64,000 nucleotides of DNA from Podarcis muralis (GCF_964188315.1 NC_135670.1:27466001-27530000), one strand, 5' to 3'; numbered from the stretch's first letter, positions 18,558-64,000 are shown. The notes: generated from the letters alone by a model not told the origin. Made by a program: numbers and translations.

Positions 18558-18990
18558 ATGATGGAGTGGTGCCTGTTCCTTGCCACAGTCCTGGTCTCCA
18601 TTGGTAAGAGAAACTAGTTTGAGACAGACCCAGGTCTTTCTCATCCTCTCCCAGAGTGCAGACTTTGCTACACTGAGATATAGTTCGATAAGCTGGTCCT
18701 TACCTCATTCCTTCTCAGGTCTCGGCATCCAGCAACTACAGTCCCCGAAACCCTCAGAGGCTGTTCCTCTAGGTGGGACCATCAGCATGTCTTGCACATT
18801 TGATAGCGGAAGCATCACTGATAACAACTACCCTCTCTGGATCTAGCACAGTTGGGTAAAGTGCTGTGGCTGTTGCTTTACCACACCAGCAAAAGAGCAT
18901 TCGGTGTCCCAGCCCATTTCTCTGGGTCTAGAACTGGGGATACAATGTCTTTGGCCATCACTGGGGCCTTGCAAGAAGATGAAACTGTAC
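18558..18990 (+). pseudogene. IGLV pseudogene V1
   Basis: Leader 18558-18603 (MMEWCLFLATVLVSIG/gtaaga); V exon from 18719 (QQLQSPKPSEAVPLGGTISMSC...NYPLWI*); in-frame TAG at 18844-18846; FR3 breaks off at LQEDET into a MITE end, with no YYC and no RSS. Confidence 0.9.
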
Positions 18991-19742
18991 ATTCGAAAAC
19001 CGAGGTACCTCTGTATTTGCATTCATTCATTGCATGACAACCGGCCACCTTCTTCTACCTCAGCTGTAGCAAAACATGTCCCTCCTGTATCCTGTAGCCA
19101 CGGCAGACATTGCAACCTTGCAACAGTTTGACTTCACTCCCAAAGGTGCACCCCTCCATTGTTTCCCTGGACAGAGGGATGCCAACCAGTCATTGCTTAC
19201 TACAGTGGTACCTCAGGCTAAGTACTTAATTCGTTCCGGAGGTCCGTCTTTAACCTGAAATTGTTCTTCACCTGAAGCACCACTTTAGCTAATGGGGCCT
19301 CTTGCTGCTGCTGCGGCGCCGGAACACTATTTCTGTTCTCATCCTGAAGCAAAGTTCTTAACCTGAAGCACTATTTCTGGGTTAGCGGAGTCTGTAACCT
19401 GAAGCGTATGTAACCTGAGGTACGACTGAACAATATTTTTTTCTCAAAACAACATATACAGTTATAAAAAGCATACATTATTCAAAATTAAAAAGGTATC
19501 ATTAAATGCATTCCAGGGCCTCTGAATCTGGAACAGATGAGTAAAATCTGTCTGCCTCTGGTTGATCTCTTTTCTTCAACCAGATCTCCACACACCCTCT
19601 TTATCGCAGCATATGTTTGCAGTTGTTGACATGCTATAAATTACAACTTGGAGAGGCACTCCCACCATGGCGTCCTGCCGGAAATTCTATTCCAGTGTTT
19701 ACCTTCTAAAAAAAAAGGCTTCAGGCTGTTTTTGAAGGAAAC

Positions 19743-36468: not shown

Positions 36469-38249
36469 CCTAACTGACTATATCTGACTCCAGCTCATCT
36501 GCTTGAAGTCCGGGAAGGGTTAACCACCAGTAGGGGGAGTCCTGCTGATGCACATCAACTAGGAACTCCCCCGGGGTCACTGCTCGTGGGCGTGCCTTAG
36601 GCATCTGACAGAGTGCAGCAAAGGCCCTTCTGCTTATTTTGGAGCTTTAATACCCTCTGGGACAGGAGCAGGACATTTGCATGAAGAGTCTGCTGTCTGG
36701 GCCACTGGAGGTTTAAGAGGGATGGGGAAGAGGCTGGCCAGAGATCCCATTGCTTCCTGTTCCTCCACGATGGCCTGGGCCTCCCTGATCATCTCAATCC
36801 TGTCTTCCATCGGTGAGAGCAATTGAATAGCGAAAGGAAGAGAAAAATCTGACAAAAGTCTTTTACACTATAATCCAATATTTGTGAAGGTTTGGGGTTG
36901 CTACACTGTGTGAGACAGTTCTTGTTGCATGGCAAGTTCCCGACCCCCCCCTCCCGGTGGAAATAAAGACACATGAAATATACTCCGAGTCGCAAAGTGA
37001 TTTCATGCTCTTTATTCAGCTCATAGTGGTGAGGAGGAATGAATGAAAGTCCCCTCAAAGTATCTGCTTTATATACATTATTTACACAATGGGCTGCACA
37101 TGATTGGCTAATTCCGGAATTCTTCTGTAAGCCAATCAGGTTGTGGATTCACTTCTATCTGGAGCTGGATTGGGTGGTTCCTGCCAACCAATCATACTGC
37201 TGCATTGTTCTAGGACCAATCAGACTGCTGCATTCTGAATCCTATTGTTCTAGGACCAATCAGACTGCTGCATTTTGGATCCTATTCAACTCAGTACATA
37301 ACAACACATGACACAATTATTAAGGTTAATGGGCTAAAAAAAAGGCCACAACTTTATTGGTTGCAGGTGATGAGTGGCATTGGCTTAGGCATTGGTCAAA
37401 GAAGAAGAAGAAGAAGAAGAAGAAGAAGAAGAGTAGTAGTAGTAGTAGTAGTAGTAGGAGTTTGGATTTGATATCCTGCTTTTTCACTACCTGAAGGAGT
37501 CTCAAAGCGGCTAAAATTCTCCTTTCCCTTCCTCCCCCACAACAAACACTCTGTGGGGTGAGTGGGGCTGAGAGACTTCAGAGAAGTGTGACTGGCTCAA
37601 GGTCACCCAGCTGCTGCATGTGGAGGAATAGGGAATCGAACCCAGCTCACCAGATTATGAGTCCACCACTCTTAACCACTACACCACACTGGCTCTCCTA
37701 ACTGACTATATCTGACTCCAGCTCATCTGCTTGAAGTCCGGGAAGGGTTAACCACCAGTAGGGGGAGTCCTGCTGATGCACATCAACTAGGAACTCCCCC
37801 GGGGTCACCGATAGGGGGCGTGCCAGCTGGCGGTCAGCAAAGAGGGAGATCCCGGGCCGCGTCCTGCCTATTTAGGGCAGACCACGCCCCCGAACCAGCC
37901 GATTGGCCGGCTAGGCGGTGACGTGTGTGGAGGGGAGGGGCCGTGAAGCCCGCAACTCCACTTCCTCCTTAAGGCGGAAGTGGCTTTCCCTTCCAGGTCC
38001 CAGTGCCCAGCAGCAGCTCCCTGAAGCCCTCAGAGGTTGTGTCTGCAGGAGATACGGTCACCTTTTCCTGCAGCTTCAGTGGTGGAACCATCACTGATGG
38101 CAACTACCCTCTCTGGGTCCATCAGAAACTGGGGAATTCTCCACGGCTGTTGATTGACCAGCAGAAGAGCACCAGGCATCGCAGCCCATTTCTCTGGGTC
38201 TAAGTCAGGGAACACCATGTCCCTGACCATCACAGGAGCCATGGCAGAA

Positions 38250-46900: not shown

Positions 46901-47642
46901 AATGTTGGCACCAGGTGAGCCTTTCTGGGGAGAGCATTCTACAGTCAGGGAGCCACCACAGAAAAGGCCCGTTCTCTTGTTGCCACCCTCCAAATCACTC
47001 CAGGTTGGGGGACATAGAGAAGGGCCTCAGATGACACACGGAGGTTCTGGGTAGGTTCATATAGGGAGAGCCGATCCTTAAACAATTGAGGACCTGAGCT
47101 GTGTATGGCTTCATAGGTCAATACTCACACTTATTACCACCAAGGCAGTGCTTAATATCTCAAAGGACAGTTGTTACCACCAGGCTGGCCCTGCATGAAA
47201 TGTTTCTTTATTGTAGATCCATTCAATGAACCATGCCAGGGTTTTTTGAATGCCCTCCTAGGCTAAGTACAGACTAACCCACCGAGGGATTTCTATTTGA
47301 CTGGAAGGGCAAGCAAGGTGGATAGCAGAAAGAAGAATCCGAGTCTGCCCAGAGGGGCTGTATGCAAGGAAGGACCTCTGCCCCAAAGCACTCCCTCTGC
47401 TAACCCAAGCCTCTGGACCCAGATCCTTATATTTATGAATCCCAGGTACCTGAGCATACCATGACCAGCAGTTTGCAGCTGCATTTTCTGTGCCAGTCCT
47501 CCAGCATCTATAGACAGTAGTTAAAGAGTTAGACATTTGCATGAAGGGGCTGCTCCCTTGACCTCTTTGGATTTAAAAGAGATTGGGCAGAGGCCATCAG
47601 GATATCCTTTGGCTTTAAATTTGCTCAGCAGATTTCCTCATA

Positions 47643-48143
47643 ATGGCCTGGGGCTTGCTCCACTTCACAGTCCTGGCATCCATCATTGGTGAGGGAGATT
47701 CATTGGGAGGATGGGGGAAAATATCTGATATGTCGCAAAGAGAGGCATATCTTGCCCTCCCAAGCCCTGCGATTTGCAAAGTATTTGGTGTTGTCCACTT
47801 TAAATTAATGTACGGATTCTTTGCCCTGCTTCCTTCCAGGTCCCAGTGTCCAGCAGTTACAGACTTTGAAGGACACAGAATTTGTGGCACCAGGTGGGAC
47901 GGTCACCATGTCTTGCAGGTTTGACAGTGGAAACATTGGTGATGGCAACTACCCTTTGTGGGTACAGAAGAAACCTGAGAGTAAACCCTGGACACTGATC
48001 TACACCACCAGCATCCGACCGTCTGACGTTCCAGCCCGTTTCTCTGGGTCTCGATCGGGGAATGTGATGTCCCTGACCATCACGGGGGCCCTTCTGGAAG
48101 CGAAGCTGCTTATTACTGTTGTGTGTGGACTGGGAGTCAGTGG
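47643..48143 (+). pseudogene. IGLV pseudogene V7 (expanded family)
   Basis: Leader 47643-47688; V exon from 47840; 1-nt deletion at about 48100 (GAAGCGAAG vs GAAGACGAAG) shifts the frame before YYC; RSS intact. Confidence 0.9.
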
Positions 48144-48182
48144 CACAGTGCTTCATTGGGATGGGGAAGTGAGACAAAAACC
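48144..48182 (+). other. 23-RSS of pseudogene V7
   Basis: CACAGTG-23-ACAAAAACC (consensus). Confidence 0.95.
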
Positions 48183-48353
48183 TCCTGTCCTTTGCTCTCT
48201 CTGTACATCAACAGAATCTGAACTCCCTGCTGTAGCCTCTGTTTGTTTGCATAGTGAATGGTTTATTGAGCATGCATCCTTGCACCGTTTCTGCAGGGAG
48301 GTTCAGCGAAGCCTGCTATTTATCAAGCACTCATTCTGAATATGCATACACAG

Positions 48354-48436
48354 CCAGCAGCAGACCGTCGTCGTTCCAGCCCATTTCTTTGGGTCTAGAT
48401 CAGGGAATGGGATGTCCTTGACCATCACCCCTGGGC
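48354..48436 (+). pseudogene. V-gene CDR2/FR3 relic (further copies 55939-56021, 59735-59817)
   Basis: Aligns to the family FR3; the third copy reads [29 protein letters not shown] vs [29 protein letters not shown]. Confidence 0.8.
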
Positions 48437-48814
48437 ATCCTGTAGGTGTCACTGTTGCCCTTTCCACTTTGGCTGGATGGAGACACATCAAGGAAGCGTT
48501 TCAGATAAATGCATTGGATACCTAAACAGAGAAAACAGGTGGAGGAAAACGGGGCTCCATATCGCCATTTGGCAGCACAATGTTATATTGCATATGCAAC
48601 GCTTATTCTTTCCACATCTTGCTGAGTCCTAAGTATCAGTTTGCTTCCAAATTTTCTCCGCGGTTCAGTTATTGCTTAAATCGTGCTGTGCAATGTTTTA
48701 TATTGTAAGTGCCGCTTTATTATTTATATCTGTATTATAGATATTTTCATGCACGCTGCCTAGAGAACTTCAGTCATGGGGTGTCATAGAGATATTATTT
48801 ATATGAATAAATTA

Positions 48815-49171
48815 AAGGTAAAGGTACCCCTGCCCATACGGGCCAGTCTTGACAGACTCTAGGGTTGTGCACCCATCTCACTCAAGAGGCCGGGGGCCAG
48901 CGCTGTCCGGAGACACTTCTGGGTCACGTGGCCAGCGTGACATCGCTGCTCTGGCGAGCCAGAGCCACACACGGAAACGCCGCTTACCTTCCCGCTAGTA
49001 AGCGGTCCCTATTTATCTACTTGCACCCGGGGGTGCTTTTGAACTGCTAGGTTGGCAGGCGCTGGGACCGAGCAACGGGAGCGCACCCCGCCGCGGGGAT
49101 TCGAACCGCTGACCTTTCGATCGGCAAGCCCTAGGCGCTGAGGCTTTTACCCACAGCGCCACCCGTGTCCC
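48815..49171 (-). mobile_element. Sauria/Squam1-type SINE, divergent subfamily
   Basis: TSD ATGAATAAATTA at 48803-48814 and 49172-49183. Confidence 0.92.
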
Positions 49172-49529
49172 ATGAATAAATTAGATTTGTCCTAAATCAA
49201 CAACAGAAAATGAGCAACAGAATTTGCTGCTGTGAACCAGAGCCTTTTCACACTGCAGGAGGGGGGAGAATTGGATTGGGGAAGCCCTGTGGGTGCGTCA
49301 TGCAGAAAGTGGAAGGTTGGGAGAAATGGCTAAAAATGGCAGTGGCGTCTGGTAACATTTTGACTTGGATTCCTATTTGACTGGATGGGAGATTCCATTG
49401 TGAGGCATTTTAATTTACGTATGGCTGTATGCAAGGAAGGTCCTTAAAAGAAAAAGGGGAAAAAAGAAGAAGGAAAAAAATCAATCTATGAATCTCTGTT
49501 CTACCTTTTTTAAAAAATCAGACCCAGTG

Positions 49530-50334
49530 AAGGCGGTGAAGGTCCTGTGTGAGTTTCTGGAGGCCGTTGGAGGATGGATGGCAGCTAGCAGATTGAGGTT
49601 GAAACAGAAGTACTGTTTTGGGGGGACAGGGGTGGGCAGGTGTGGAGGACTTCCTGGTCCTGAATGGGGTAACTGTGCTACTGAAGGACCAGGTGCGCAG
49701 CCTGGGAGTCATTTTGGACTCACAGCTGTCCATGGAGGCGCAGGTCAATTCTGTGTCCAGGGCAGCTGTCTACCACCTCCATCAGGTACACAGGCTGAGA
49801 CCCTACCTGCCCGCAGACTGTCTCACCAGAGTGGTGCATGCTCTAGTTATCTCCCACTTGGACTACTGTAATGCGCTCTACGTGGGGCTACCTTTGAAGG
49901 TGACCTGGAAACTACAACTAATCAAGAATGCGGCAGCCAGACTGGTGACTGGGAGTGGCCTCCGAGACCATATTATCCTGGTCCTGAAAGACCATGTTTC
50001 CGAGTGCAGTTCAAAGTGTTGGTGCTGACCTTTAAAGCCCTAAACGGCCTCGGCCCAGTACACCTGAAGGAGTGTCTCCACCCCCATTGTCCAGCTCCGA
50101 GGGCCTCCTGGTGGTTCCCTCATTGTGAGAAGTGAGGTTACAGGGAACCAAGCAGAGGGCCTTTTCAGTAGTGGTGCCCTCCCATCAGATTTCAAGGAAA
50201 TAAACAACTATCTGACTTTTAGAAGACATCTGAAGGCACCCCTGCTTAGAGAAGTTTTATTCTGTTTTTAGTTTTCTGTTGGTAGCTGCACAGAGTGGCT
50301 GGGGAAACCCAGCCAGATGGGCGGGATATGAATA

Positions 50335-50382
<48 letters not shown>
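49530..50382 (+). mobile_element. L2/CR1-clade LINE 3' fragment
   Basis: RT-like ORF (LDYCNALYVGLPLK...LQLIKNAAARLV) and (AAT)n tail; shorter relatives at about 3590-3780, 16580-16830, 46910-47130, 57960-58140. Confidence 0.82.
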
Positions 50383-50620
50383 TGTTTTCTCCGAATCCAG
50401 ATCCTTACTTTTCAGAATCCCAGCACCCGGATACCATGACCAGCAGAAGGCTGCTGTTTTTTCTGAGCTAGTCCTTCAAGATCGAGACACAGTAGTTAAG
50501 GAGCTAGACATTTGCATGAAGGGGCTGCTCCACTGACCTCTGGGGATTTAAGAGAGGCTGGCAGATGCCAATGGGATCTCTCTTTTCTTTAGAAAAGCCC
50601 ACTCTGTAGATTTCCTCATA

Positions 50621-51119
50621 ATGGCCTGGGGCTTGCTCCTCTTCACAATCCTGGTGTCCATCATTGGTGAGGATGATTCATTGGGAGGATGAGGAAAAAA
50701 ATCTGATATGAAGCAGAGAGAAGCATAACCTGCCCTTCCAAGCCCTGCACTTTGCAAAGTATTTGGTGTTATCCACTTTAAATTAACCTACTGATTCTGT
50801 TCCTTGCTTTCTTCCAGGTCCCAGTGTCCAGCAGTTACTGACTTTGAAGGACCCAGAATTTGTGGCTCCAGGTGGGACAGTCACCATGTCTTGCAGGCTC
50901 GACAGTGTAATCGCTGATAGCAACTACCCTTTGTGGGTACAGAAAAAGCCTGATAGTAAACCCCAGACACTTATCCATGACACCAGCGTCAGACCGTCTG
51001 ATGTTCCAGCCCGTTTCTCTGGGTCTCGATCGGGGAATGTGATGTCCCTGACCATCACGGGGGCCCTTCTGGAAGATGAAGCTATTTATTACTGTTGTGC
51101 GTGGGCTGGGAGTCAGTGA
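50621..51119 (+). CDS. IGLV segment V8 (expanded family), open to terminal TGA
   Basis: Leader 50621-50666 (MAWGLLLFTILVSIIG); V exon 50818-51119; CDR1 one codon shorter than siblings; ends YYCCAWAGSQ*. Confidence 0.9.
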
Positions 51120-51158
51120 CACGGTGCTTCATTCAGATGAGGAAGTGGGACAAAAACC
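51120..51158 (+). other. 23-RSS of V8
   Basis: CACGGTG-23-ACAAAAACC. Confidence 0.92.
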
Positions 51159-53180
51159 TCCTCTCCTTTGCTCTCTGTGCATGTGAACAAAATCTGAACC
51201 TCTGTTTGTTTTATCTTCCTGTAGTGAATGAGTTCCCAAAGAAAGGCTGGGGCTTTTTTCAGGCAACCTGTTCTTCCACAATTTCTTCAGGAAGGTTCAG
51301 CAATATCTACTGTTTATCGATCATTCATTCTATTATGTTTGCAGGAAGGTTGTATTATATTGTGCTGCAAAAACATGTTATAACACATTTCCCAGTGCAT
51401 TTTCTCATAAACTTCCTCATTGCATGAAATTCCGATGTTTGGAGGAAGTTGGTTGGTTGGGCATGAACTCCAAGCCACCTTTTATTTTGCAACCTGAATT
51501 TGCCAGTACAGTCAAACCTTGGTTCCGAAACAGCTTAGTTGCTGATCAAATCGGCTCCCAAACACCGCAAACCCGGAAGCAAGTGTTCCAGTTTGCGAAC
51601 ATTTTTCAGAAGCTGAACATACGACGTGACTTCTGCTTGAGTGCAGGAATCCCCTGCAACCAATCGGAAGCCATGCCTTGGTTTTTGAGCAGTTTTGGGA
51701 GTCGAAAGGGCTCCTGGAACGGATTAAGCTTGAGAACCAAGGTGCCACTATATTGAATCCTGTTCTAGCCCTCGCTGCCAGTTGGAGAAATCAAACTCCC
51801 AGTTGGTTGATGCCCAATACCATAGGTGCCAACTCCCTGGGTCCTGGGTGCCTAATCACCCACAAAATTCCGCAGGGGCCAAGCACCCACAAATTTGGGT
51901 GCCAGGGCATGGCACCTATGGCTCAGTGCACCAATGGTCGTGGGGCCAAGCTGACACTCCTGCCCAAGACTTTAATTCTTAAATTAGAGTTGTTTCCAAG
52001 CAAGGCAAAGTTACAATGAACACAGGTGTGCAAGGGAATCAGATGCAAAGTTTGGTTCTGACCACTGTGAGAACAGGAAGTTAGACTAGATGGGCCATTG
52101 GTGTGAGACCGAGCAGGATCTTCTTACCTTCTTCAGTCTGAGACATTGATCCGACAAGCGACATGTTCCCTGCACCTTCCTTTTCAAGATTAGGTCAGGT
52201 ACTACTCTTAGAGCAGCAAGCAGCCAGAGTCCCAGGACCAGGGAAGCCCAACCCAAGGGGGTTGGGGTTCTGAGGTCTGTTGGTGGCAACCTTGGTGTCA
52301 CACCATCTCAGGAGGTGACGTTGATGGCAGCTCAGAATCTGATTTGCTCTCAGTAGCCTGCTTCTCTAAAGGAGACTCATCAGCAACAAGGAGAGACGCT
52401 GTTTGTGCGTGTGTTACTCCACAGCAAAAGGGGTCTACGGTGTTACTGGAAGAGAACACCCCTCAGCTCTCCTGCTTGTTCCCTGACCTGAATCCATGTC
52501 TCCATCTTCCATACTGCAAACCCGTTCTCTGCTCTCGAAGCCGAGGTGCCAAGGTTGAAGGACACTTGCCCTGGTAGATTTTCTCCCTAATGTTGGGCTA
52601 CATAAATGCAGTCTAAATAAGTTCAAAATATGTTTTCCCCCATGGCTTCCTATTTTCTGGTGCTACCCTAGGAACAAAAACAGGTTTGGGGGCTAAACTC
52701 TGACAGCAATGAATGCATTCAGGGACTGATCCTGATCCTCTGGTCCCAGTTTTGCTTTGTTTTTAGCTAACTCAGGAGACATTTCAGAGATCGTGTGACC
52801 TGAGTTCTTTTGTCTCAGATTCATTCTGCAAATGCCTTGGGCAAAGCAGAAACTAGACCACGCCAATGATTTATATGAGAAGGGGTCCCAGAAAGAAAAA
52901 TACAAGTTTGCCTGTTGCTGTACGCAAGGAAAGAGCTCTAAAATGAAAACTTAGTCCCTGAATTCAGATTCCCAGGTCTCTGAGCATACCACAACCAGCA
53001 AGGCTGCAGTTGCTTTTTCTAAGCTAGTCCTCCAGCATCTAGAGACCATAGTTAAGGAGTTACACATTTGCATGAAAGGGGCTCCTCCCTTGACCTCAAG
53101 GGAATTTAACTGATGCTTTGCAGATGCCAATGAGATCTTCTTTTGCTTCAGAGAAAACTAGCCCAGCAGATTTCACCATT

Positions 53181-53673
53181 ATGCTTCTCTTCTCAATCCT
53201 GCTGTCCATCATTGGTAAGGGGAATTCACTTTTCGGATGGGATACATTTTCTTCGAAGCAAAGAACATGCGTCCTCTGTGCTCTAAAACCCTACAGCTTG
53301 CAGAACATTTGGTGATGATACATAGTAAATTAAACTGCCAAACAGTGAAATGCCTTGTTCCCTTCCAGGTCCCAGTGTCCAGCAGCTACAGAACTTGAAG
53401 GATCCAGAATTTGTGGCTCCGGGTGGGACTGTCACCATGTCTTGCCGATTGGAGAGCGGGAGCATCAGTGACAGCAACCAGCCTATGTGGGTGCAGAAAA
53501 AAGCCGAGAGTAAACATCGACTGATGATGTACACCACCAGGAACAGACCACCTGATGTTCCAGCCCGTTTCTCTGGGTCTAGCTCAGGGAATGTGATGTC
53601 CCTGACCATCACGGGGGCCCTTCTGGAAGACGAAGCTGCTTATTACTGTGCTGTGTGGACTGCGAGTCACTGG
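53181..53673 (+). CDS. IGLV segment V9 (expanded family), open frame, short leader
   Basis: Leader 53181-53214 (MLLFSILLSIIG); V exon 53369-53673 ending YYCAVWTASHW. Confidence 0.87.
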
Positions 53674-53712
53674 CACTATGCTTCATTCAGATGGGGAAGT
53701 GAGACAAAAACC
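53674..53712 (+). other. 23-RSS of V9
   Basis: CACTATG-23-ACAAAAACC. Confidence 0.88.
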
Positions 53713-54206
53713 TCTTCTCCTTTGCTCCCTGTGTACATCAGCAGAATCTGAACCGCCTTTCAAAGTTTCAGCAATGTCTGCAGCAGCACCGTGTTTTAAA
53801 ATCCTGAATGCGAATCCCCAAATGTATGCATACAATGTAAAAAAATAGAAAAGGATCTCAACCTGCAGTAGATAGGAAAGCATTGGAAGAATATATGGCT
53901 TGCAACCTACCAATGCTAGTACTTATTATCACCACAGGGCATGATGTTATGCAGGGCATAATGTCTCAAAGGAGAGGGGCAGGGCCTGAACCTTCAGAGG
54001 GAAGCTTTGCCCTGCTAGACCTCTCCCCTAATCTTTGATGAGTATTGGGCCGCACAAGGTTGCTTCGGAAAATGCACTTAAACCCAGTTCTATTTTTCTC
54101 AAATAATGTTTAGGAGTACTCTCATTTTGACTCAAGAAAATCACCATTTTATAGTTGAAATTGGGAAAAATAAATACAGTAAATGGACAAGAGTACAAAG
54201 ATTCAT

Positions 54207-54547
54207 GGGACGCTGTGGGTTAAACCACAGAGCCTAGGACTTGCTGATCAGAAGGTCGGCGGTTCGAATCCCCACGACTGGGTGAGCTTCCGTTGCTCGG
54301 TCCCTGCTCCTGCCAACCTAGGAGTTCGAAAGCATGTCAAAGTGCAAGTAGATAAATAGGTACCACTCCGGCATTAAGGTAAACAGCATTTCCGTGTGCT
54401 GCTCTGGTTCGCCAGAAGCGGCTTAGTCATGCTGGCCACATGACCCGGAAGATGTACGCCGGCTCCCTTGGCCAGTAAAGCGAGATGAGCGCCACAACCC
54501 CAGAGTCGGCCACAACTGGACCTAATGGTCAGGGGTCCCTTTACCTT
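54207..54547 (+). mobile_element. Sauria/Squam1-type SINE
   Basis: TSD TACAAAGATTCAT. Confidence 0.92.
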
Positions 54548-55239
54548 TACAAAGATTCATAAAATGTTTAGGGGTATGCATACCCCTGCATCCCCTCAGG
54601 AAAAAATCACTGCTTAAACATATTGAGAAGAACAGCTTTCTGTACCAGGGATTCATATATTCCAACCAGTGTTATCACTGGGACAACAACAACAAAAACA
54701 ACAACAGAACAGATTTGGGTGTTGAACCCTAACATCTTCACTGAATTCAAGGGTTGCTCCCCGTCCTGACCCCTTGGTCCAGGGAATTATTTTTAGCAAA
54801 TGCAGCCATGCTGTTCCAGGCATGGTGTGAGCTGAAATGTTTCCTGCAGATCCATTCCTTCAATCAGGCCAGGATTTATTTTTAGTGCCTTGAGCTAAAC
54901 ACAGACTAGTCCACCCCTGGATTAATCATGAAGGAAAGGACGCTGCCTGCCACTGTGTGTAAGGGGGGACCTATAAAATAAAGTAATGCAAAAAAACAAA
55001 AAACCCTAGCACATTCTAAGCTTAAATTCTGAATCCAGTTTGTCAGTCCCAAGTCCTGAACATAGCATGACCAGGAGTTGGCAGCTGCTTTATCTGTTAG
55101 TCCTCTACAGTAGTTAAGGAGCTAGACATTTGCATGAAGGGGCTGCTCCCCTGACCTCTGGGGATTTAAGAGAGATGGGGCAGATGCCAATGGGATCTCC
55201 TTTTGCTTTAGAAAATCTAGCCCAGCAGTTTTCACCATC

Positions 55240-55727
55240 ATGGCCTTGTTTCTCGTCACATTCCTGATCGCCATCATTGGTGAGGGAAATTCATTGGGTG
55301 AATGGGGACAAATCTGCGTGGAAATAAAAGCAGTGATCTTCTGTTCTCTAAAACCTTGCACGTTGCAAAATGTTTGATGTAGATTAATGTGCTGAGCAGT
55401 TCCCTGCCTTGCTTCCTTCCAGGTCCCAGTGTCCAGCAGCTACAGACTTTGAAGGACCCAGAATTTGTGGCACGAGGAGGGACGGTCACCATGTCTTGCA
55501 GGTTTGACAGTGGAAACATCGGTGACAGCAACTACCCTTGGTGGGCACAGAAAAAACCTGGGAGTAGACCCCGACAGATAATGTATGCCACCAGCACCCG
55601 ACCGTCTGACATTCCAGCCCGTTTCTCTGGGTCTCGATCGGGGAACGTGATGTCCCTGACCATCACGGGGGCCCTTCTGGAAGATGAAGCTGCTTATTAC
55701 TGTTGTGTGTGGACTGGGAGCCAGTGA
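55240..55727 (+). CDS. IGLV segment V10 (expanded family), open to terminal TGA
   Basis: Leader 55240-55279 (MALFLVTFLIAIIG); V exon 55423-55727 ending [10 protein letters not shown]. Confidence 0.92.
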
Positions 55728-55766
55728 CACAGTGCTTCAGTGGGATGGGGAAGTGAGACAAAAACC
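55728..55766 (+). other. 23-RSS of V10
   Basis: CACAGTG-23-ACAAAAACC (consensus). Confidence 0.95.
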
Positions 55767-56428
55767 TCCTCTCCTTTGCTCTCTTGGTGCATCAACAGAA
55801 TCTGAACTCCTTTATTGTAGCCTCTGTTTGTTTGCATAGTGAATGGTGTATTGAGCGTCCATCCTTGCACAGTTTCTGCAGGGAGGTTCAGAGAAGCCTG
55901 CCATTTATCAAGCACTCATTCTGAGTCTGTGTGCACTGCCAGCACCACACCATCTGCTGTTCCAGCCCATTTCTCTGGGTCTAGTCAGGGAATGGAAGGT
56001 CCTAAACAATCACCCCTGGGCATCCAGTAGGTGTCACTGTTGCACTTTCAACTTTGGCTGGATGGAGACACATCAAGGAAGTGTTTCAGATAAATGTGTT
56101 GTAAATTTAAACAGAGAAAACAGTAGTGGAAAACGGGGCTCCACATTGCCATCTGGCTGCAAAATGTTATATTGCATATACAAAGCATATAAACCGCTTT
56201 TGCTATACTAATCTAGCTGAGTCCTAAGTATTGGCTTGCTTCAAAATTCTCTCTGTGGTTCAGTTTTTGCTTAAATCGTGCTGTGCAATGTTTTATATTG
56301 TAAGTGTCTCTTTATAGTTTAGATTTGTATTCTAGATATTCTTATTCCCACTGCCTAGGGAGCTTCAGTCATGGGGTGTCATAGAGATATTGTTTATATG
56401 AAAAAATTAGAGTTGTCCTAAACCAACA

Positions 56429-56763
56429 AAGAGGAACGCGGGTGGCGCTGTGGGTTAAACCACAGAAGGGCTGCGGTTTGAATCCCCGCGATGGGGTGAG
56501 CTCCTGTTGCTCGGTCCCTGCTCCTGCCAACCTAGCAGTCCGAAAGCATATCAAAGTGCAAGTAGATAAATAGGTACCGCTCTGGCGGGAAGGTAAACGG
56601 CGTTTCCGTGTGCTGCTCTGGTTCACCAGAAGCGGCTTAGTCATGCTGGCCACATGACCTGGAAGCTGTACGCCGGCTCCCTCGGCCAATAAAGCGAGAT
56701 GAGCGCCGCAACTCCAGAGTCGACCATGACTAAACCTAATGGCCAGGGGTCCCTTTACCTTTA
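56429..56763 (+). mobile_element. Sauria/Squam1-type SINE
   Basis: TSD CCTAAACCAACA. Confidence 0.9.
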
Positions 56764-57295
56764 CCTAAACCAACAACAGAAAAAGACAAATAGAATTTGC
56801 TGCTGTGAACCAGAGCCTTTCCCCTCACACTGCAGAAAGGGGGAGAATTGAACTGGGGAAGCCCCATGGGTGTGTCATGCAGAAAGTGGAAGCTTGGGGA
56901 AATGGCTAAAAATGGCAGTAGCAACATTTTGACTTGGATTCGTATTTGACTGGATGGTGGATTCCATTGTGAGGGATTCTAATCTACGTATGGCTGTATG
57001 CAAGGAAGGTCCTCTAAAAGAAAAGGAAACAAAGAAGGAAAACATGAATCTGTGAAACCTTTCTCTGAATCCAGATCTTTTCTTCTCAGATTCCCAGCTC
57101 CCTGATACCACGACCAACAGATGGCTGCTGCTTGTTCTGTGCTAGTCCTTCAAGATCGAGACACAGTAGTTAAGGAGCTAGACATTTGCATGAAGGGGCT
57201 GCTCCCCTGAACTCTGGGGATTTAAGAGAGATGGGGCAGATGCCAATGGAATCTCTCTTTTCTTTCAAAAAACCCAGTCTGTAGATTTCCTCATA

Positions 57296-57747
57296 ATGGC
57301 CTGGGGCTTGCTCCTCTTCACAATCCTGGTGTCCATCATTGGTGAGGGAGATTCATTGGGTGGATGGGGGATAATTCTGATATGAAGCAAAATGTTTGAT
57401 GTAGATTAATGTGTTAAGCAGTTCCCTGCCTTGCTTCCTTCCAGGTCCCAGTGTCCAGCAGTTACAGACCTTGAAGGACCCAGAATTTGTGGCACCAGGT
57501 GGGACGGTCACAATGTCTTGCAGGTTTGACAGTGGAAACATTGGTGATGGCAATTACCCATGGTGGGCACAGAAAAAAGTGGGAGTAGACCCCGAAAGAT
57601 AATGTACTTCACCAGCACCCGACCGTCTGACGTTCCAGCCGTTTTTCTGGGTCTCGATCGGGGAACGTGATGTCCCTGACCATCACGGGGGCCCTTCTGG
57701 AAGACGAAGCTGTTTATTACTGTGTTGTATGGACTGGGAGTCAGTGG
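57296..57747 (+). pseudogene. IGLV pseudogene V11 (expanded family)
   Basis: Leader 57296-57341; V exon from 57445; two separate 1-nt deletions (FR2 A-run near 57575; CCAGCCGTTTTTCT near 57640); RSS present. Confidence 0.9.
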
Positions 57748-57786
57748 CACAGTGCTTCATTCAGACGGGGAAGTGAGATAAAAACT
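57748..57786 (+). other. 23-RSS of pseudogene V11
   Basis: CACAGTG-23-ATAAAAACT. Confidence 0.88.
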
Positions 57787-57962
57787 TCTCCTTTGCTCCC
57801 TTGGTGCATCAACAGAATCTGAAGTGCCTTTCAAAGTACCATCACTGTGTTTTAAAATTCCGCATACCTATCCCCAAATGTATGGATACAAAGTAAAAAA
57901 TATCTGATCTTGCAGTGGTAGAATATATGGCTACCAATGCTAATCACAGAATGATATGCCAA

Positions 57963-58014
<52 letters not shown>

Positions 58015-58147
58015 TATTTATGTCCTGCCCATCTGGCTGGGTTTCCCCAGTCACTCTGGGTGGCTTCCAACAGAATATTAAAATACAATAGCTTATTAAA
58101 CATTAAAAGCTTTCAGGACCTCGCTTTCAGGACGAGGGAGACAGCAT

Positions 58148-58422
58148 TTGTCCATATACATGCTTCCAGGTCATGTGGCCAGCAGGACTAAACCGCTTCT
58201 GGCACAACGGAACACAATGATGGAAGCCAGGGCGCATGGAAACACTGTTTACCTTTTTGCCACAGTGGTACCTATTTATCTACTTGCACTGGTGTGCTTT
58301 CGAAGTGCTAAGTTGGCAGGAGCTGGGGCAGAGCAACGGGAGTTCACCCCGTCATGGGGATTCAAACTGCTGACCTTCTGATCAGCAAGCGCAAGAGGCT
58401 CAGTGGTTTAGAACACAGCGCC
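58148..58422 (-). mobile_element. Sauria/Squam1-type SINE, partial
   Basis: Reverse-complement body and head; ends truncated. Confidence 0.8.
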
Positions 58423-59036
58423 AAGCTTTCTGTACTAGGGCTTCATATATTCCAACCAGTGCTATCACTGGGACAAACAAAAAACCAAACATTATAAATC
58501 AGATTTAGGTGTTGAACTTTAATATCTTCACTGAATTCAAGGGTTGCTCCCCGTCCCGACCCCTTGGTCCAGAGAATTATTTTTTAGCAAAAGCAGCCAT
58601 GTATCCCAGGCATGGCATGAGCTGAAATGTTTGCTGCAGATCCATTCCTGCAATCAGGCCAGGATGCTTTTTAATGCCTTGGGCTAAACACAGACTGGTC
58701 TATCCCAGGATTATACCACCATGAAGAAAAGGAGGCTTCCTGCCACTGTGTGTAAGGGGGGACCTATAAAATAAAAGAATGCAGACCCCCCAAAAAAACC
58801 ATACCACCCTTCTAAGCTTAAACTCAGAATCCAGATTGTCAGTTCCAGCTCCCTGAACACAGCATGACCAGCAGTTGGCAGCTGCTTTTTCTGTTAGTCC
58901 TCTACAGTAGTTAAGGAGCTAGATATTTGCATGAAGGGGCTGCTCCCCTGATCTCCGGGGATTTAAGAGAGATGGGGCAGAGGCCAATGGGATCTCATTT
59001 TGCTTTAGAAAATCTAGCCCAGCAGTTTTCTCCATC

Positions 59037-59524
59037 ATGGTCTTGTTTCTCGTCACATTCCTGATCGCCATCATTGGTGAGGGAAATTCATTGGGTCAAT
59101 GGGGACAAATCTGTGTGGAAATAAAAGCAGGTGTCTTCTGTTCTCTAAAACCCTGCACTTTGCAAAATGTTTGATGTAGATTAATGTGGTAAGCAGTTCC
59201 CTGCCTTGCTTCCTTCCAGGTCCCAGTGTCCAGCAGTTACAGACTTTGAAGGACCCAGAATTTGTGGCACCAGGTGGGACGGTCACCATGTCTTGCAGGT
59301 TTGACAGTGGAAACATTGGTGATGGCAACTACCCATGGTGGGCACAGAAAAAAACTGGGAGTAGACCCCGACTGTTAATGTACACAACCACCAGCCGACC
59401 GTCTGATGTTCCAGCCCGTTTCTCTGGGTCTCGATCGGGGAACGTGATGTCCCTGACCATCACGGGGGCCCTTCTGGAAGATGAAGCTGCTTATTACTGT
59501 GCTGTGTGGACTGGGAGTCAGTGA
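59037..59524 (+). CDS. IGLV segment V12 (expanded family), open to terminal TGA
   Basis: Leader 59037-59076 (MVLFLVTFLIAIIG); V exon 59220-59524 ending YYCAVWTGSQ*. Confidence 0.92.
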
Positions 59525-59563
59525 CACAGTGCTTCATTCAGACGGGGAAGTGAGACAAAAACC
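59525..59563 (+). other. 23-RSS of V12
   Basis: CACAGTG-23-ACAAAAACC (consensus). Confidence 0.95.
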
Positions 59564-59912
59564 TCTTCTCCTTTGCTCTCTCTGTACATCAACAGAATCT
59601 GAACTCCCTGCTGTAGCCTCTGTTTGTTTGCATAGTGAATGGTTTATTGAGCATGTATCCTTGCACCGTTTCTGCAGGGAGGTTCAGAGAAGCCTGCCAT
59701 TTATCAAGCACTCATTCTGAACCTGTGTGCACCGCCGGCACCAGACCGTCTGCTGTTCCAGCCTATTTCTCGGGGTCTAGATCAGGGAATGGAAGGTCCT
59801 TGACCATCACCCCTGGGCATCCAGTAGGTGTCGCTGTTGCACTTTCAACTTTGGCTGGATGGAGACACATCAAAGGAGTGTTTTATTTAACGTGTTGTTG
59901 TAAATTTAAACA

Positions 59913-60275
59913 GCGTGGGTGGCGCTGTGGTCTAAACCACAGAGCCTAGGGCTTGCCAATCAGAAAGTCGGTGGTTTGAATCCCCGCGACGGGGTGAGCT
60001 CCCGTTGCTCGGTCCCTGCTCCTGCCAACCTAGCAGTTCGAAAGCACATGAAAGTGCAAGTAGATAAATAGGTATCGCTCTGGTGGGAAGGTAAACGGCG
60101 TTTCCGTGTGCTGCTCTGGTTCGCCAAAAGCAGCTTAGTCATGCTGGCCACATGTCCTGGAAGCTGTCTGCGGACAAGCACTGAGTCCCTCGGCCTATAG
60201 AGCGAGATGAGCGCGCAACCCCTGAGTCGTCAGCGGCTGGACCTAACAGTCAGGGGTACCTTTACGTTTACCTTT
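59913..60275 (+). mobile_element. Sauria/Squam1-type SINE
   Basis: Head and tail; imperfect TAAATT(T/C)AAA TSD. Confidence 0.88.
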
Positions 60276-61092
60276 AAATTCAAAGAGAGAAAACAGGTAG
60301 AGAAAAATGTGGTTCCACAGCGCCATTGGGTGGCACAATGTTATATCGCATATACAATGCATATCAATCGCTTTTTCATGACAAATCTAGCTGAGTCCTA
60401 AGTATTTGTTTGCTTCTAAATTCTCTCTGCGGTTCAGTTATTGGGTTAACCGTGCTGCGCAATATTTTATATTGTAAGTGCCTCTTTTTTGTTTATATTT
60501 GTATTTTAGACATACTTATGCACGCTGCCTAGAGAGCTTCAGTCATGGGGTGGCATAGAGATATCGTTTATATGAATAAATTAGAGCAACAACAGAAAAC
60601 AAGCGGCAGAATTTGCTGCTGTGAACCAGAGCCTTTTCACACTGCATGAGGGGGAAGCCCTGTGGGTGTGTCATGCAGAAAGTGGAAGGTTGGGGGAAAT
60701 GGCTAAAAATGGCAGTAGCAACATTTTGACTTGGATTCCTATTTGACTGGATGGGAGATTCCATTTTGTGGGATTGTAATCTGCGTATGACTGTAGGCAA
60801 GGAAGGTCCCTCCAAAAGAAAAGGAAAGGAAGATGGAAAAAAAACAATCTGTTGAACTTTTCTCTGACGCCAGATCCTTACTTATCAGATTCCCAGTGCT
60901 TGATACCATGACCAGCAGATGGCTGCTGCTTTTTCTGTGTAGTCCATCAACATCTGGACACAGTAGTTAAGGAGCTACCCATTTGCATGAAGGGGCTGCT
61001 CCCCTAACCTCTGGGGATTTAAGAGAGATGGGGCGGATGCCAATGGGATCTCTTTTTTCTTTAGAGAAGCCCACTCTGTAGATTTCCTCACA

Positions 61093-61593
61093 ATGGCCTG
61101 GGGCTTGCTCCTCTTCACAATCCTGTCGTCCATCATTGGTGAGGGAGATTCATTGGGTGGATGGGAAGCAAATGTGACATGAAGCAGAGAGAGGCAGAAA
61201 CTGCCCTTCCAAGCCCTGCGCTTTGCAAAGTATTTGGTGTTGTCCAATTTAAATTAACCTACTGATTCTTTGCCCTGCTTGCTTCCAGGTCCCAGTATCC
61301 AGCAGTTACAGACTTTGAAGGAGACAGAATTTGTGGCACCAGGTGGGACGGTCACCATGTCTTGCAGGTTTGACAGTGGAAACATCGGTGATAGCAACTA
61401 CCCATGGTGGGCACAGAAAAAAACTGGGAGTAGACCCCGATAGATAATGTACACCACCAGCACCCGACCGTCTGACGTTCCAGCCCGTTTCTCTGGGTCT
61501 CGATCGGGGAACGTGATGTCCCTGACCATCACGGGGGCCCTTCTGGAAGACGAAGCTGCTTATTACTGTTGCGTGTGGACTGGGAGTCAGGGG
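61093..61593 (+). pseudogene. IGLV pseudogene V13 (expanded family)
   Basis: Leader 61093-61138; V exon from 61289; in-frame TAG at 61441-61443 (CAG in V10); RSS intact. Confidence 0.9.
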
Positions 61594-61632
61594 CACAGTG
61601 CTTCCTTCAGATGGGGAAGTGAGACAAAAACC
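61594..61632 (+). other. 23-RSS of pseudogene V13
   Basis: CACAGTG-23-ACAAAAACC (consensus). Confidence 0.95.
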
Positions 61633-63720
61633 TCCTCTCCTTTGCTCTCTATGTACATCAACAGAATCTGAACTCCCTGCTGTAGCCTCAGTTTGTTTGC
61701 ACGGTGAATGAGTTTGCAAAAAAAGGCCAAGGTCCCTTCCAGGTGACGTCTTTATTGAGCATTCATGCTGATAGAACCTGTAAGAGACAGAAAGCCCTTT
61801 TGAAGTCCTGCCTCCTCTTGCACAACAGAAACACCCCCCACCTGTCAGACTTAGGGGATTCTTACCTCCCCTGGAGCATGAAGGATCAAGGCAGTAGCCA
61901 GGAAGTTCATATCTATGGTTTTATTCAGTTCCCGTGGTGCAGGACAAAGAATCCAGTCCTTAACTGGTTGGTGACATTGCTCACTCTGAGCTCTTCCACT
62001 TCTTTCCCCAACAACACCCCGTGGCCATGCAAGTGGCCTCAGGAGTCAAATGTCTTTGAGCCCTCCACTCTTGAATTCTAAGGGAGCGACGTGTACATGG
62101 GGATGGTGGCTCTTCTACAATTTCCAAGGATGTCTCTGCTGGCAATTCTGCCCCTCCCCCTCCTTCTCCTAACACTTCATAACTTGGCAGCTCTGAGTTC
62201 TGCTGCAATTACCGTATTTTTCGTTTCATAAGACACACTTTTTTCCTCCTAAAAAGTAAGGGGAAATGTCTGTGCGATTTATGGAGCGAATGCCTACGGA
62301 TGGCGGAGGGATCTGCTGCAGTCACAAGCAGAGGATCCATGGTTCCCCTTCCTTCCCTCCTCTGTGGCTCGCTTTGAAGCAGCAAAGCGGGAGAGGAGCC
62401 GCTTACACGGGTGTAAGCGGCTCCTGTCCGGTTGGCTGCTTTAAAGCGAGTGGGCTCTCTTTCCCTCTCTCCTCCCCGGCTCTGCTCGGTGAAAAGCTCC
62501 TTCTCCATACACCCCACCCGTGCTCCTTGTTCCTTTAGTGTTTTTCCTTCCCTCCCCACTTAAAATGTGGTTACAAAGCACCGATCCACATGGATCCTCA
62601 GGATTTTTGCATTGGGTCACCCCAAGTTCACATAGCATTTCCATGGCTACAGATTGCACCAAAAAAGCACGCACCCATTATTGCCTGGGGCCACAATGGC
62701 ACAAAAACGTGGTTACAAAGCACGGATCCACATGGATTCTCATGATTTTTGTATTGGGCTACCCCAAACTCACCATCAGATCACATGTCTGTGGCCACAG
62801 CATGAATCACAAAAATCATACATTCACTGTTTCGTTCAGAATATTTTTTTTCTTGTTTTCCTCCTCTAAAAACTAGGTGCGTCTTATGGAGTGAAAAATA
62901 CGGTAAGTCCTGTCTCCCTCTTCTCTTGAAACGTCTGTAGACTTTCCCCTTCTCCTCCGAGAGAAGCAAAGGAGGAGGAGGGGGTGATTCCCAGCCCTTG
63001 CCTTCAGTCTAGTCCCTGGCACCAGCCGCCCCCTGGAAGCAATGCTTCTGAATACTGGTTTCTGGACAGGCGATTGTGCTCCTGTTCTCAAATTCTGCTT
63101 GAGGGTTCTCCATAGTCATCTGGTTGACCATTGTAAGACCAGGATTCTGGCTAGTCAGTCCGTTGGCCTGATCCAGGAGCTTCTCAAAGACACCTCCTTT
63201 CTGTTTGCCTGGTGAACACTTTCACGCAACAACTGACTGAATACCAAAATAAGCCTACTATGAATAGGAAAAACGCCACCTGAAGAAATAAACAAAAGTG
63301 GGAAAGTGTTGTGAACCAGAGTAAATAACAATTGTTCGTGTTTGTAAAACTAGCAGCTCAGTGCTAAACCAATTTGGTAAATCACATTGCCCCTTCAGTT
63401 CATTAAAAAGGAATGGAGCCATCCAGCTCAAGGAAATTGGCATTTCCTCTAGAATGAGACCCACCAAGTTCAGCGGGGCTTATGATAATGTCCTTGTGTC
63501 CTTCCTGCCTTTCACTGTAACAATGTCTTCCCATCACCATATTTGAATAATGTGCTTCTTCCATCACCATATATGAAGTCTCTCTCAGCAGGGCGGAGAG
63601 ACCTGGCCAGATGTGATTGGTGGAAGAGTTGCCTTCATCTCCTTTAAAGAGTGAATCACAGCGATCCCTGGAAAGAGACCCATTTGCCTCAATATGCAGA
63701 GTGTACCTGGATTCCTCTCC

Positions 63721-64000
63721 ATGGCCTGGTCCTGCCTGCTCCTCCTGCTCCTCACTTACCCCCCAGGTAACAGAATGAGTGAAATCCTCAGGAACAGATC
63801 TGTGCTGAGATCCAGGTGTGATTTTTCTGTAGGCGCAACTAAACTTCTTTCTCTTTTCGGGTTTTTATCTTTTTGCAGGTTCCTCCTCCCAGCCAGTGCT
63901 GACTCAGAGGCCCTCAACATCCTTTTCCTCAGGTGAGACAGTCCGTCTCCCCTGCACTTTGAATGCTGGATACAGTATCAGCAGCTATAGAGTCGGGTGG
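63721..64000 (+). CDS. IGLV segment V14, truncated by window end
   Basis: Leader 63721-63766 (MAWSCLLLLLLTYPPG); V exon from 63879 QPVLTQRPSTSFSSGETVRLPCTLNAGYSISSYRVGW. Confidence 0.9.

What the first reader, a model, noticed from the sequence alone, without database searches (positions are those of the whole stretch)
47535..61632. Recently expanded, divergent V-lambda family with a rewired VH/VL interface
Seen: seven paralogues in 14 kb share an atypical N-terminus (QQLQTLKDPEFVAPG instead of ..LTQPPS) and FR2 W-[A/V]-Q-K-K in every copy. Known: in conventional VL, Kabat L36 (usually Tyr) and L38 (Gln, H-bonded to VH Gln39) are core interface residues; here they are Ala/Val and Lys in all seven, while W35, both Cys and YYC are kept. 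The YP before W and LTITGA recall IGLV7/8. Inference: these light chains may pair only with a complementary (for example acidic H39) VH subset, use a different partner, or work unpaired. Fixation across the expansion suggests selection rather than decay.
Basis: partly seen in the sequence, partly recalled or inferred. Interest (0 to 1): 0.75.

Follow-up and report, generated by a model that had tools for sequence, protein, structure and literature searches.

The report
Lizard lambda V genes with lysine-38
Seven neighbouring antibody light-chain (lambda) V gene segments of a lacertid lizard, four intact and at least three expressed, belong to an old reptile family and are ordinary except for a lysine at a contact position with the heavy chain that lacertids alone carry.

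Summary
Window 47535-61632 contains seven tandem lambda V gene segments on the + strand. Each has an octamer, a split leader, a V exon and a 23-spacer recombination signal, and all seven read W-[A/V]-Q-K-K in FR2. Three are defective: V1 has a 1-nt deletion, V5 has two, and V7 has an in-frame stop.

- **N-terminus and L36.** The "atypical" QQLQ.LK N-terminus and a non-aromatic residue at L36 are shared by snakes, anoles, varanids, a gecko, tuatara and turtles. Rodent V-lambda-1/2 also has Val36, plus Glu38, and pairs with ordinary Gln39 heavy chains in solved structures.
- **Lys38.** Only this residue is lineage-specific. It occurs in Podarcis, Lacerta and Zootoca and nowhere else sampled.
- **Origin of Lys38.** The tree shows three sublineages that each have Zootoca and Podarcis orthologues. 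Lys38 therefore arose once and was inherited, rather than fixed seven times.
- **Age of the expansion.** The copies are 73-90% identical in DNA, so most of the expansion is not recent.
- **Use.** RNA shows spliced leaders and V-end junctions. RefSeq V-J-C lambda models from lacertids carry the motif. dN/dS is below 1.

These are working, conventional light-chain genes. Whether Lys38 biases heavy-chain pairing could not be tested, because no lacertid VH sequence was reachable.

The parts
47535..48182 (+). V1 (WVQKK). Octamer 47535-47542, leader exon 47643-47688, V exon 47840-48143, RSS-23 48144-48182. Defective here: a 1-nt deletion in FR3 (..LLE|x|EAAYYC).
   Evidence: The Podarcis muralis orthologue inside fused model P0050 is intact.
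50510..51158 (+). V2 (WVQKK), intact. Octamer 50510, leader 50621-50666, V exon 50818-51119 (ends in TGA at the heptamer), RSS 51120-51158 with heptamer CACGGTG. CDR1 is one codon shorter.
   Evidence: The leader intron is spliced in RNA (joint 50666|50818 in X1, X3 and X23). Contigs keep the FR2 codons unchanged. 98% identical to P. muralis P0006.
53066..53712 (+). V3 (WVQKK), intact. It has a shorter leader (ATG 53181-53214), V exon 53369-53673, and RSS 53674-53712 with heptamer CACTATG. His replaces Pro at L44.
   Evidence: Splice joint 53214|53369 in X3 and X23. Orthologues: P. muralis P0017 and the Zootoca V-J-C model P0038.
55128..55766 (+). V4 (WAQKK), intact. Leader 55240-55279, V exon 55423-55727 (TGA at the heptamer), RSS 55728-55766.
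   Evidence: RNA contig X1 record 8 covers 55422-55726 and runs on for 26 non-germline letters.
57184..57786 (+). V5 (WAQKK), pseudogene. Two 1-nt deletions, one just after FR2 'QKK' and one in FR3 'PAR'. The nonamer is degraded to ATAAAAACT and the leader intron is shortened to 103 nt.
58925..59563 (+). V6 (WAQKK), intact. Leader 59037-59076, V exon 59220-59524 (TGA at the heptamer), RSS 59525-59563.
   Evidence: Pfam V-set E 2e-12. AlphaFold2 model pLDDT 85.7 with a VL fold.
60981..61632 (+). V7 (WAQKK), pseudogene. In-frame TAG at the FR2/CDR2 border (RPR*IMY). Leader 61093-61138, V exon 61289-61593, RSS 61594-61632.
37979..38249 (+). Decayed member of a sister subfamily (..GNYPLWVHQKLGNSPRLLI). 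It is frameshifted and its 3' end is replaced by a microsatellite. It keeps Gln at L38.
   Evidence: Its Podarcis raffonei counterpart inside P0062 reads WVQQK.
18688..18992 (+). Decayed, frameshifted older family member (IQQLQSPKPSEAVPLGG..NNYPLW). No RSS was found.

Best explanation
This is a tandem array of seven germline immunoglobulin lambda V gene segments in the IGL V cluster of a lacertid lizard (Podarcis-like). Four are intact and three are pseudogenes. Each intact unit works as any V-lambda does. An octamer/TATA promoter drives transcription and a roughly 150-nt leader intron is spliced out. The 23-spacer RSS directs RAG joining to a J-lambda. The product is a conventional V-J-C lambda light chain that pairs with a heavy chain.

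The family is an ancient sauropsid branch related to mammalian IGLV7/8 and rodent V-lambda-1. Its QQLQ.LK N-terminus and its small aliphatic residue at Kabat L36 are old family traits. The only lacertid-specific feature is Lys instead of Gln at L38. It arose once by a single C-to-A change in the ancestor of this subfamily and was inherited by every later duplicate, pseudogenes included.

Shown here: gene anatomy, defects, expression with splicing, V-end junctions, phylogenetic distribution and purifying selection. Inferred: Lys38 is tolerated opposite an ordinary Gln H39, as Glu38 is in rodent lambda-1, with at most a modest effect on pairing.
For: Anatomy: octamer, split leader, V exon and heptamer-23-nonamer in all seven copies. 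V-set domain. VL fold with pLDDT 85.7; the nearest structures are pig, dog and camelid lambda and mouse B1-8.

Expression: GT..AG leader splices of V2 and V3 appear in raw RNA reads of X23 (8 and 4 reads, one direction only) and in contigs X1 and X3. Contigs cover the V2, V3 and V4 exons, stop at the V end, and carry 5-26 further letters that do not match the RSS. Depth is zero just downstream of the RSS.

In-frame V-J-C lambda models with W[AVI]QKK exist in Podarcis muralis (P0039), Zootoca (P0038, P0040, P0042, P0060) and Lacerta agilis (P0041), with J 'WVFGGGT..' and C-lambda ending ..SECA.

Distribution: Q or H at L38 in 40+ relatives from snakes, Anolis, Sceloporus, Phrynosoma, Elgaria, Varanus, a gecko, tuatara and turtles. 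K occurs only in lacertids. In the tree, the family clade has support 99/95 and the lacertid K38 clade 94/79, with three sublineages each containing Zootoca and Podarcis.

dN/dS is 0.32 in FR and 0.50 in CDR.

Precedent: mouse lambda-1 'WVQEKPDHLFTG' shares scFv chains with VH 'WVKQRPG' or 'WVRQSPE' (9udp, 5fxc). Hamster lambda-2 P0047 also reads WVQEK. One search shows 'WYQKKPGQ' in an anti-HIV Fab light chain (5whz).
Against: A charged residue at L38 is not always neutral. In an engineered human Fab, VL Q38E alone impaired assembly and was rescued by VH Q39K. The Q38K/Q39E pair raised correct pairing from 25% to 56% (PMC5297516). The residue at H39 in lacertid heavy chains was not seen here. 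X1 and X3 are RNA only by the tool's guess, and tissue is unknown. The J part of the junction letters was not displayed, so productive in-frame joining in this species rests on relatives' gene models.
Confidence: 0.85

Rival explanations
1. Natural charge steering. Germline Lys at L38 biases these light chains toward a subset of heavy chains with a complementary (acidic, or at least non-basic) residue at H39. That would partition the lacertid repertoire, much as engineers do with Q38K/Q39E.
For: Lys38 is kept in every lacertid member of the subfamily across Podarcis, Lacerta and Zootoca, including expressed genes. Engineered Q38K/Q39E improves selective pairing, and an unmatched Q38E impairs assembly (PMC5297516). 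The V3 lineage carries a second interface change, P44H.
Against: A single inherited substitution needs no selection to be present in all copies, and the pseudogenes keep it. Rodent lambda-1 (Glu38, Val36, Phe44) pairs with Gln39 VH. The other interface residues (W35, P44, Y87, and J F98 in relatives) are conventional. No VH data are available.
Confidence: 0.1
2. These V domains use a non-heavy-chain partner or act unpaired, as surrogate-like or free light chains.
For: The only support is the unusual L36 and L38 residues and the frequent free Cys at L89 (YYCC).
Against: The genes carry functional 23-RSS, whereas VpreB-type genes do not. Relatives' transcripts are standard V-J-C-lambda with the C-terminal Cys used for the H-L disulfide. 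The same L36 and L89 features occur across squamates, where this family forms part of ordinary lambda models.
Confidence: 0.03
3. The array is a decaying, functionless remnant, and the shared motif only reflects too little time to diverge.
For: Three of the seven copies are broken. Variant heptamers occur in V2 and V3.
Against: V2, V3 and V4 are transcribed, spliced and end at the V-J boundary. FR dN/dS is 0.32. Orthologues are kept intact in three genera.
Confidence: 0.02

Closest known systems
Squamate, tuatara and turtle 'QQLQ.LK' V-lambda family (database models such as Zootoca 'immunoglobulin lambda variable 8-61', Varanus 'lambda variable 7-43', Anolis and Sceloporus 'lambda-1 light chain' isoforms)
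   Same: 70-98% identity. Same N-terminus, the ..GNYP.W CDR1 end, non-aromatic L36, [24 protein letters not shown]3, and a YYC[CA]VWTGSQ 3' end.
   Different: Outside lacertids, L38 is Gln (His in one Anolis model and one salamander model). In Podarcis, Lacerta and Zootoca it is Lys.
Rodent V-lambda-1/2 (mouse IGLV1/2; hamster lambda-2 P0047)
   Same: Same length, LTITGA..EDEA FR3, A-x-W CDR3 start, Val at L36 and a charged residue at L38. Used in many solved antibodies with ordinary Gln39 VH.
   Different: About 45-50% identity. Glu rather than Lys at L38, and Phe44/Gly46 rather than Pro44/Leu46. The N-terminus is QAVVTQES, not QQLQTLKD.
Human, pig and camelid IGLV7/IGLV8
   Same: They give the best single-domain sequence and fold matches in the PDB (pig Fabs 9mtf and 9mtm, camelid 4o9h; 48-56% identity). 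They share the YP-before-W CDR1 end and LTITGA.
   Different: From memory, they carry aromatic L36 (Tyr/Phe) and Gln38. The turtle IGLV7/8-like relatives read WYQQKPG or WFQQKPG.
Engineered VL Q38K / VH Q39E charge pair for bispecific IgG (PMC5297516)
   Same: The same residue (Lys) at the same position of the VH/VL interface.
   Different: The engineered version is paired with a designed Glu at H39. Here the heavy-chain partner residue is unknown and the Lys is germline and natural.

Membership tests
Germline immunoglobulin lambda V gene segment (IGLV) | V-set Ig domain with the two conserved Cys, Trp at the start of FR2 and the YYC motif | tested here: met
   Pfam V-set E 1e-9 to 2e-12 for V2, V3, V4 and V6. 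C23, W35 and YYC are present in all codon-aligned copies. The model has a VL fold.
Germline immunoglobulin lambda V gene segment (IGLV) | Split leader: a short leader exon, an intron, then the V exon starting with the last four leader codons, the first of them split by the intron | tested here: met
   Donor GT[GA]AGG and acceptor TTCCAG in all seven copies. The splices of V2 and V3 were observed in RNA.
Germline immunoglobulin lambda V gene segment (IGLV) | Recombination signal with a 23-nt spacer directly 3' of the V exon | tested here: met
   Heptamer CAC[AGT][GA]TG, spacer exactly 23 nt, nonamer ACAAAAACC in six copies and ATAAAAACT in V5.
Germline immunoglobulin lambda V gene segment (IGLV) | Octamer-containing promoter | tested here: met
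   ATTTGCAT lies 108-115 nt upstream of each ATG.
Germline immunoglobulin lambda V gene segment (IGLV) | Joined to J-lambda and C-lambda in transcripts | tested here: met
   V-J-C models of lacertid orthologues P0038-P0042 and P0060. In this species, contigs end at the V end and continue with non-germline letters. The J letters themselves were not shown.
IGLV7/8 and rodent V-lambda-1 clan | Clusters with IGLV7/8 and V-lambda-1 rather than other lambda clans in a tree | tested here: inconclusive
   The nearest outgroups are turtle IGLV7/8-like genes and hamster lambda-2. The best PDB matches are IGLV8-like and mouse lambda-1. No members of other clans were in the tree, so exclusive clustering was not tested.
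Surrogate light chain V (VpreB) | No RSS, a germline-encoded non-Ig tail, and no rearrangement | tested here: not met
   All copies carry a 23-RSS and no tail. The transcripts end at the V-J boundary.
Complementary charge-pair VH/VL interface (K38 with D/E39) | Acidic residue at H39 in the partner heavy chains | not testable with these tools
   No lacertid VH sequence could be reached.

The most novel reading that the evidence does not exclude
Lacertid lizards carry a natural, germline-fixed charge at the conserved L38-H39 hydrogen-bond position of one expressed V-lambda subfamily. If a subset of their VH genes carries a matching acidic H39, this would be a natural heavy/light pairing code. 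It would be the evolutionary counterpart of the Q38K/Q39E trick used to build bispecific antibodies.
Probability: 0.1. Interest if true: 0.7.

Novelty: new member of a known kind. Interest (0 to 1): 0.27.

Why it matters
The main value is corrective. What looked like a young, aberrant light-chain family is an ancient, conserved and expressed sauropsid V-lambda family. Its odd N-terminus and small L36 residue are the norm in reptiles. One observation remains: a whole expressed V subfamily in lacertids carries Lys at L38, one half of the most conserved VH/VL hydrogen bond. Together with rodent lambda-1 (Glu38), this gives a second natural case for asking how much that Gln-Gln pair matters. It is also a cheap place to look for natural pairing bias. 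The calls also give a clean annotation of this part of a lizard IGL locus, including which copies are broken.

Tried and rejected
(1) Testing for an acidic H39 was not possible. The window has no VH. All three word searches were needed for the VL distribution. The scan's notes on IGHV in this genome hold no residues.

(2) Literature searches found no description of lacertid IGLV or of a natural germline K38. They returned only general statements that reptile V-lambda groups fall among the mammalian clans (bioRxiv 10.1101/002618) and the engineering paper PMC5297516.

(3) An Rfam scan of 47000-64000 found nothing, so the highly expressed repeat at 54211-54550 was not named.

(4) Positive selection was considered and rejected. 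dN/dS is below 1 in both FR and CDR for nearly every pair.

(5) Seven independent fixations of K38 were rejected in favour of one ancestral change.

(6) The large representative-protein search was not run, since no claim here rests on absence of relatives.

(7) A joined leader-plus-V precursor was not built. Exon 2 was searched by reference only.

(8) An unused typed copy of the V1 translation sat in the script. All sequences analysed were read from files.
Full report
**What is there**

A tblastn of copy 6 against the whole window shows that the window is a stretch of an immunoglobulin lambda V cluster, with all V segments on the + strand.
- Other V-lambda families lie at about 31.3, 34.5, 40.5 and 43.3 kb.
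- Two decayed relatives of the present family lie at 18.7 and 38.0 kb.
- The seven copies of the finding lie at 47.5-61.6 kb.

The DNA alignment and coordinate scans give the same anatomy for every copy.
- An ATTTGCAT octamer lies 108-115 nt upstream of the ATG.
- The leader exon is 34-46 nt and ends ..ATCATTG|GTGAGG (GTAAGG in V3).
- The intron is 103-154 nt with acceptor ..TTCCAG|GTCCC.
- The V exon is followed by a heptamer, a spacer of exactly 23 nt, and the nonamer ACAAAAACC (ATAAAAACT in V5).

The finding's start and end are V1's octamer and V7's nonamer. Pfam recognises a V-set domain. An AlphaFold2 model of V6 (pLDDT 85.7) matches pig, dog and camelid lambda V domains and mouse B1-8 and SPE-7 lambda-1.

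**Observation check**

All seven copies read TGG-GTR/GCA-CAG-AAR-AAR. That is W-V-Q-K-K in V1-V3 and W-A-Q-K-K in V4-V7. The QQLQTLKDPEFVAPGG N-terminus is present with 0-2 changes.

- V1 has a 1-nt deletion in FR3.
- V5 has two 1-nt deletions and a degraded nonamer.
- V7 has an in-frame TAG at the FR2/CDR2 border.

V2, V3, V4 and V6 are intact. V2, V4 and V6 end with a TGA that abuts the heptamer, which normal trimming at joining would remove.

**How old and how widespread**

Three word searches were run. The alignments and motif tables found 70-98% identical V genes in these groups:
- Podarcis muralis, P. lilfordi, Lacerta agilis and Zootoca vivipara;
- Anolis, Sceloporus, Phrynosoma, Elgaria and Varanus;
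- a gecko;
- many snakes;
- tuatara and sea turtles.

All of these share the QQLQ.LK-type N-terminus and a non-aromatic residue at Kabat L36 (V, A, S, I, L or T). These two "atypical" traits therefore define an ancient sauropsid family. They are not a recent divergence.

L38 is Gln in every non-lacertid member, except one Anolis model and one salamander relative, which have His. L38 is Lys only in the lacertids. Lacertid sister subfamilies keep Gln38: P0061, P0062 and the relic at 38 kb.

In the maximum-likelihood tree the family clade has support 99/95 and all Lys38 genes form one clade (94/79). That clade contains three sublineages, each with Zootoca and Podarcis orthologues:
- V1/V2 with P0006, P0002 and P0042;
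- V3 with P0017 and P0038;
- V4-V7 with P0039, P0040 and P0041.

So one ancestral C-to-A change, inherited by all later duplicates including the pseudogenes, explains the "fixation in all seven".

The copies are 73-90% identical in DNA with flanks included. FR dS is 0.04-0.41. The youngest event is a two-gene block duplication, V4-V5 to V6-V7, with a period of exactly 3,797 nt and 83-90% identity. "Recently expanded" holds at most for that step.

**Is the family used?**

Reads and contigs of four runs were laid on 50500-55800.
- The leader introns of V2 (50666|50818) and V3 (53214|53369) are removed with GT..AG ends. This is seen in raw RNA reads of X23 (8 and 4 reads, all in one direction) and in contigs of X1 and X3.
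- Contigs cover the V2, V3 and V4 exons, stop at the last V bases, and carry 5-26 further letters that do not match the RSS.
- Depth is zero in the bins just downstream of the RSS.
- The V2 contigs have no differences in the W-V-Q-K-K codons.

This is the pattern expected of rearranged V-J transcripts. X1 and X3 are RNA only by the tool's guess, but the splices argue for RNA.

Independently, RefSeq V-J-C lambda models of P. muralis, Zootoca and Lacerta carry W[AVI]QKK in frame with J (WVFGGGT..) and a C-lambda that ends in the usual Cys. dN/dS is 0.32 in frameworks and 0.50 in CDRs. That indicates purifying selection without a sign of positive selection.

**The interface claim**

L36 and L38 are interface positions, and the L38-H39 Gln-Gln hydrogen bond is conserved (stated in PMC5297516).

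Several points argue against rewiring.
- Ala/Val36 is family-wide.
- Rodent V-lambda-1/2 reads WVQEKPDHLFTG (Val36, Glu38, Phe44). It sits in the same solved scFv chains as VH domains reading WVKQRPG or WVRQSPE, that is Gln39 (9udp, 5fxc). The hamster germline P0047 has the same motif.
- WYQKKPGQ also occurs in a solved anti-HIV Fab light chain (5whz). From memory this is the 10E8 lineage, whose VH has Gln39.
- The remaining interface residues (W35, P44 except in V3, Y87, and F98 of J in relatives) are conventional.

One point argues the other way. In an engineered Fab, VL Q38E alone impaired assembly and VH Q39K rescued it. The Q38K/Q39E pair doubled correct pairing. A charge at L38 can therefore matter.

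The decisive datum is the residue at H39 in lacertid VH genes, and it could not be obtained here. I put conventional pairing at about 0.85 and a real pairing bias at about 0.10.

**Comparison and novelty**

These are new members of a known kind. They are IGLV segments of a family already present, unnamed, in database annotations of many reptiles and related to IGLV7/8 and rodent V-lambda-1. I found no paper that describes the family's traits or the lacertid Lys38. That is a small, real and undescribed natural variant rather than a new system.

**Limits**

- A leader-plus-V spliced protein was not built.
It is Podarcis-like but not identical to the P. muralis models: V2 is 98% identical to P0006, and the V1 orthologue in P0050 is intact.

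Noticed in passing
window 51117-51119, 55725-55727, 59522-59524: Three of the four intact genes (V2, V4, V6) end with an in-frame TGA directly abutting the heptamer. V1, V3 and V5 have TGG there, and V7 has GGG. A productive join must trim at least one base. Lacertid V-J-C models read ..GSQ-W-VFGG at this junction.
   Followed up: partly
window V1, V2, V4, V7 (e.g. 55701-55706) and relatives P0001, P0003, P0004, P0012, P0045: A second Cys directly follows the conserved Cys (YYCC..), that is an unpaired germline Cys at Kabat L89, an interface/CDR3 position. It alternates with Ala and is conserved from snakes to lacertids.
   Followed up: no
window 53515-53517 (V3) and P0017, P0038: The V3 lineage has His instead of the near-universal Pro at L44 (..ESKHRLMMY). 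The change is conserved in the Podarcis muralis and Zootoca orthologues and is present in a V-J-C model.
   Followed up: partly
window 55128-58924 versus 58925-62721: Two-gene block duplication. The octamers of V4/V6 and of V5/V7 are each exactly 3,797 nt apart, and the flanks are 83-90% identical.
   Followed up: partly
window 54211-54550; copies at 56463-56766 and 59923-60273: A roughly 340-nt interspersed repeat with enormous RNA depth (1e5 in contigs, hundreds of raw reads) whose reads run on into unrelated flanks. It is SINE-like, and the upstream read consensus ends in GGGACGCGGGTGG. No Rfam family matched.
   Followed up: partly
window 48373-48429, 55935-55991, 59755-59811: Short relics of a V FR3 (..[18 protein letters not shown]) lie about 230-290 nt downstream of the RSS of V1, V4 and V6. 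They are part of the longer duplicated unit that these three copies share.
   Followed up: no
window 49618-50028: An open reading frame resembling the C-terminal part of a retroelement polymerase (..LDYCNALYVGLPLK..) lies between V1 and V2. It was observed only.
   Followed up: no
window 31262-31549: The separate old V-lambda gene covered by another finding reads ..VWLQWKHQGSP in FR2. By simple counting this puts Leu at L36 and Trp at L38, another non-Gln L38 in this locus.
   Followed up: no
window 43302-43628 and P0050, P0054: The neighbouring V-lambda family reads WYEQKPG (Glu at L37), shared with Podarcis muralis and Lacerta agilis.
   Followed up: no
proteins P0048, P0050, P0054, P0062, P0037: Several database gene models fuse two or three adjacent germline V segments into one 'light chain-like' protein. 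These are annotation artefacts that could mislead counts of V genes.
   Followed up: partly
window 63721-63762: A leader-like ORF (MAWSCLLLLLLTY..) near the window end probably belongs to the next V-lambda gene. Its V exon would lie beyond the window.
   Followed up: no
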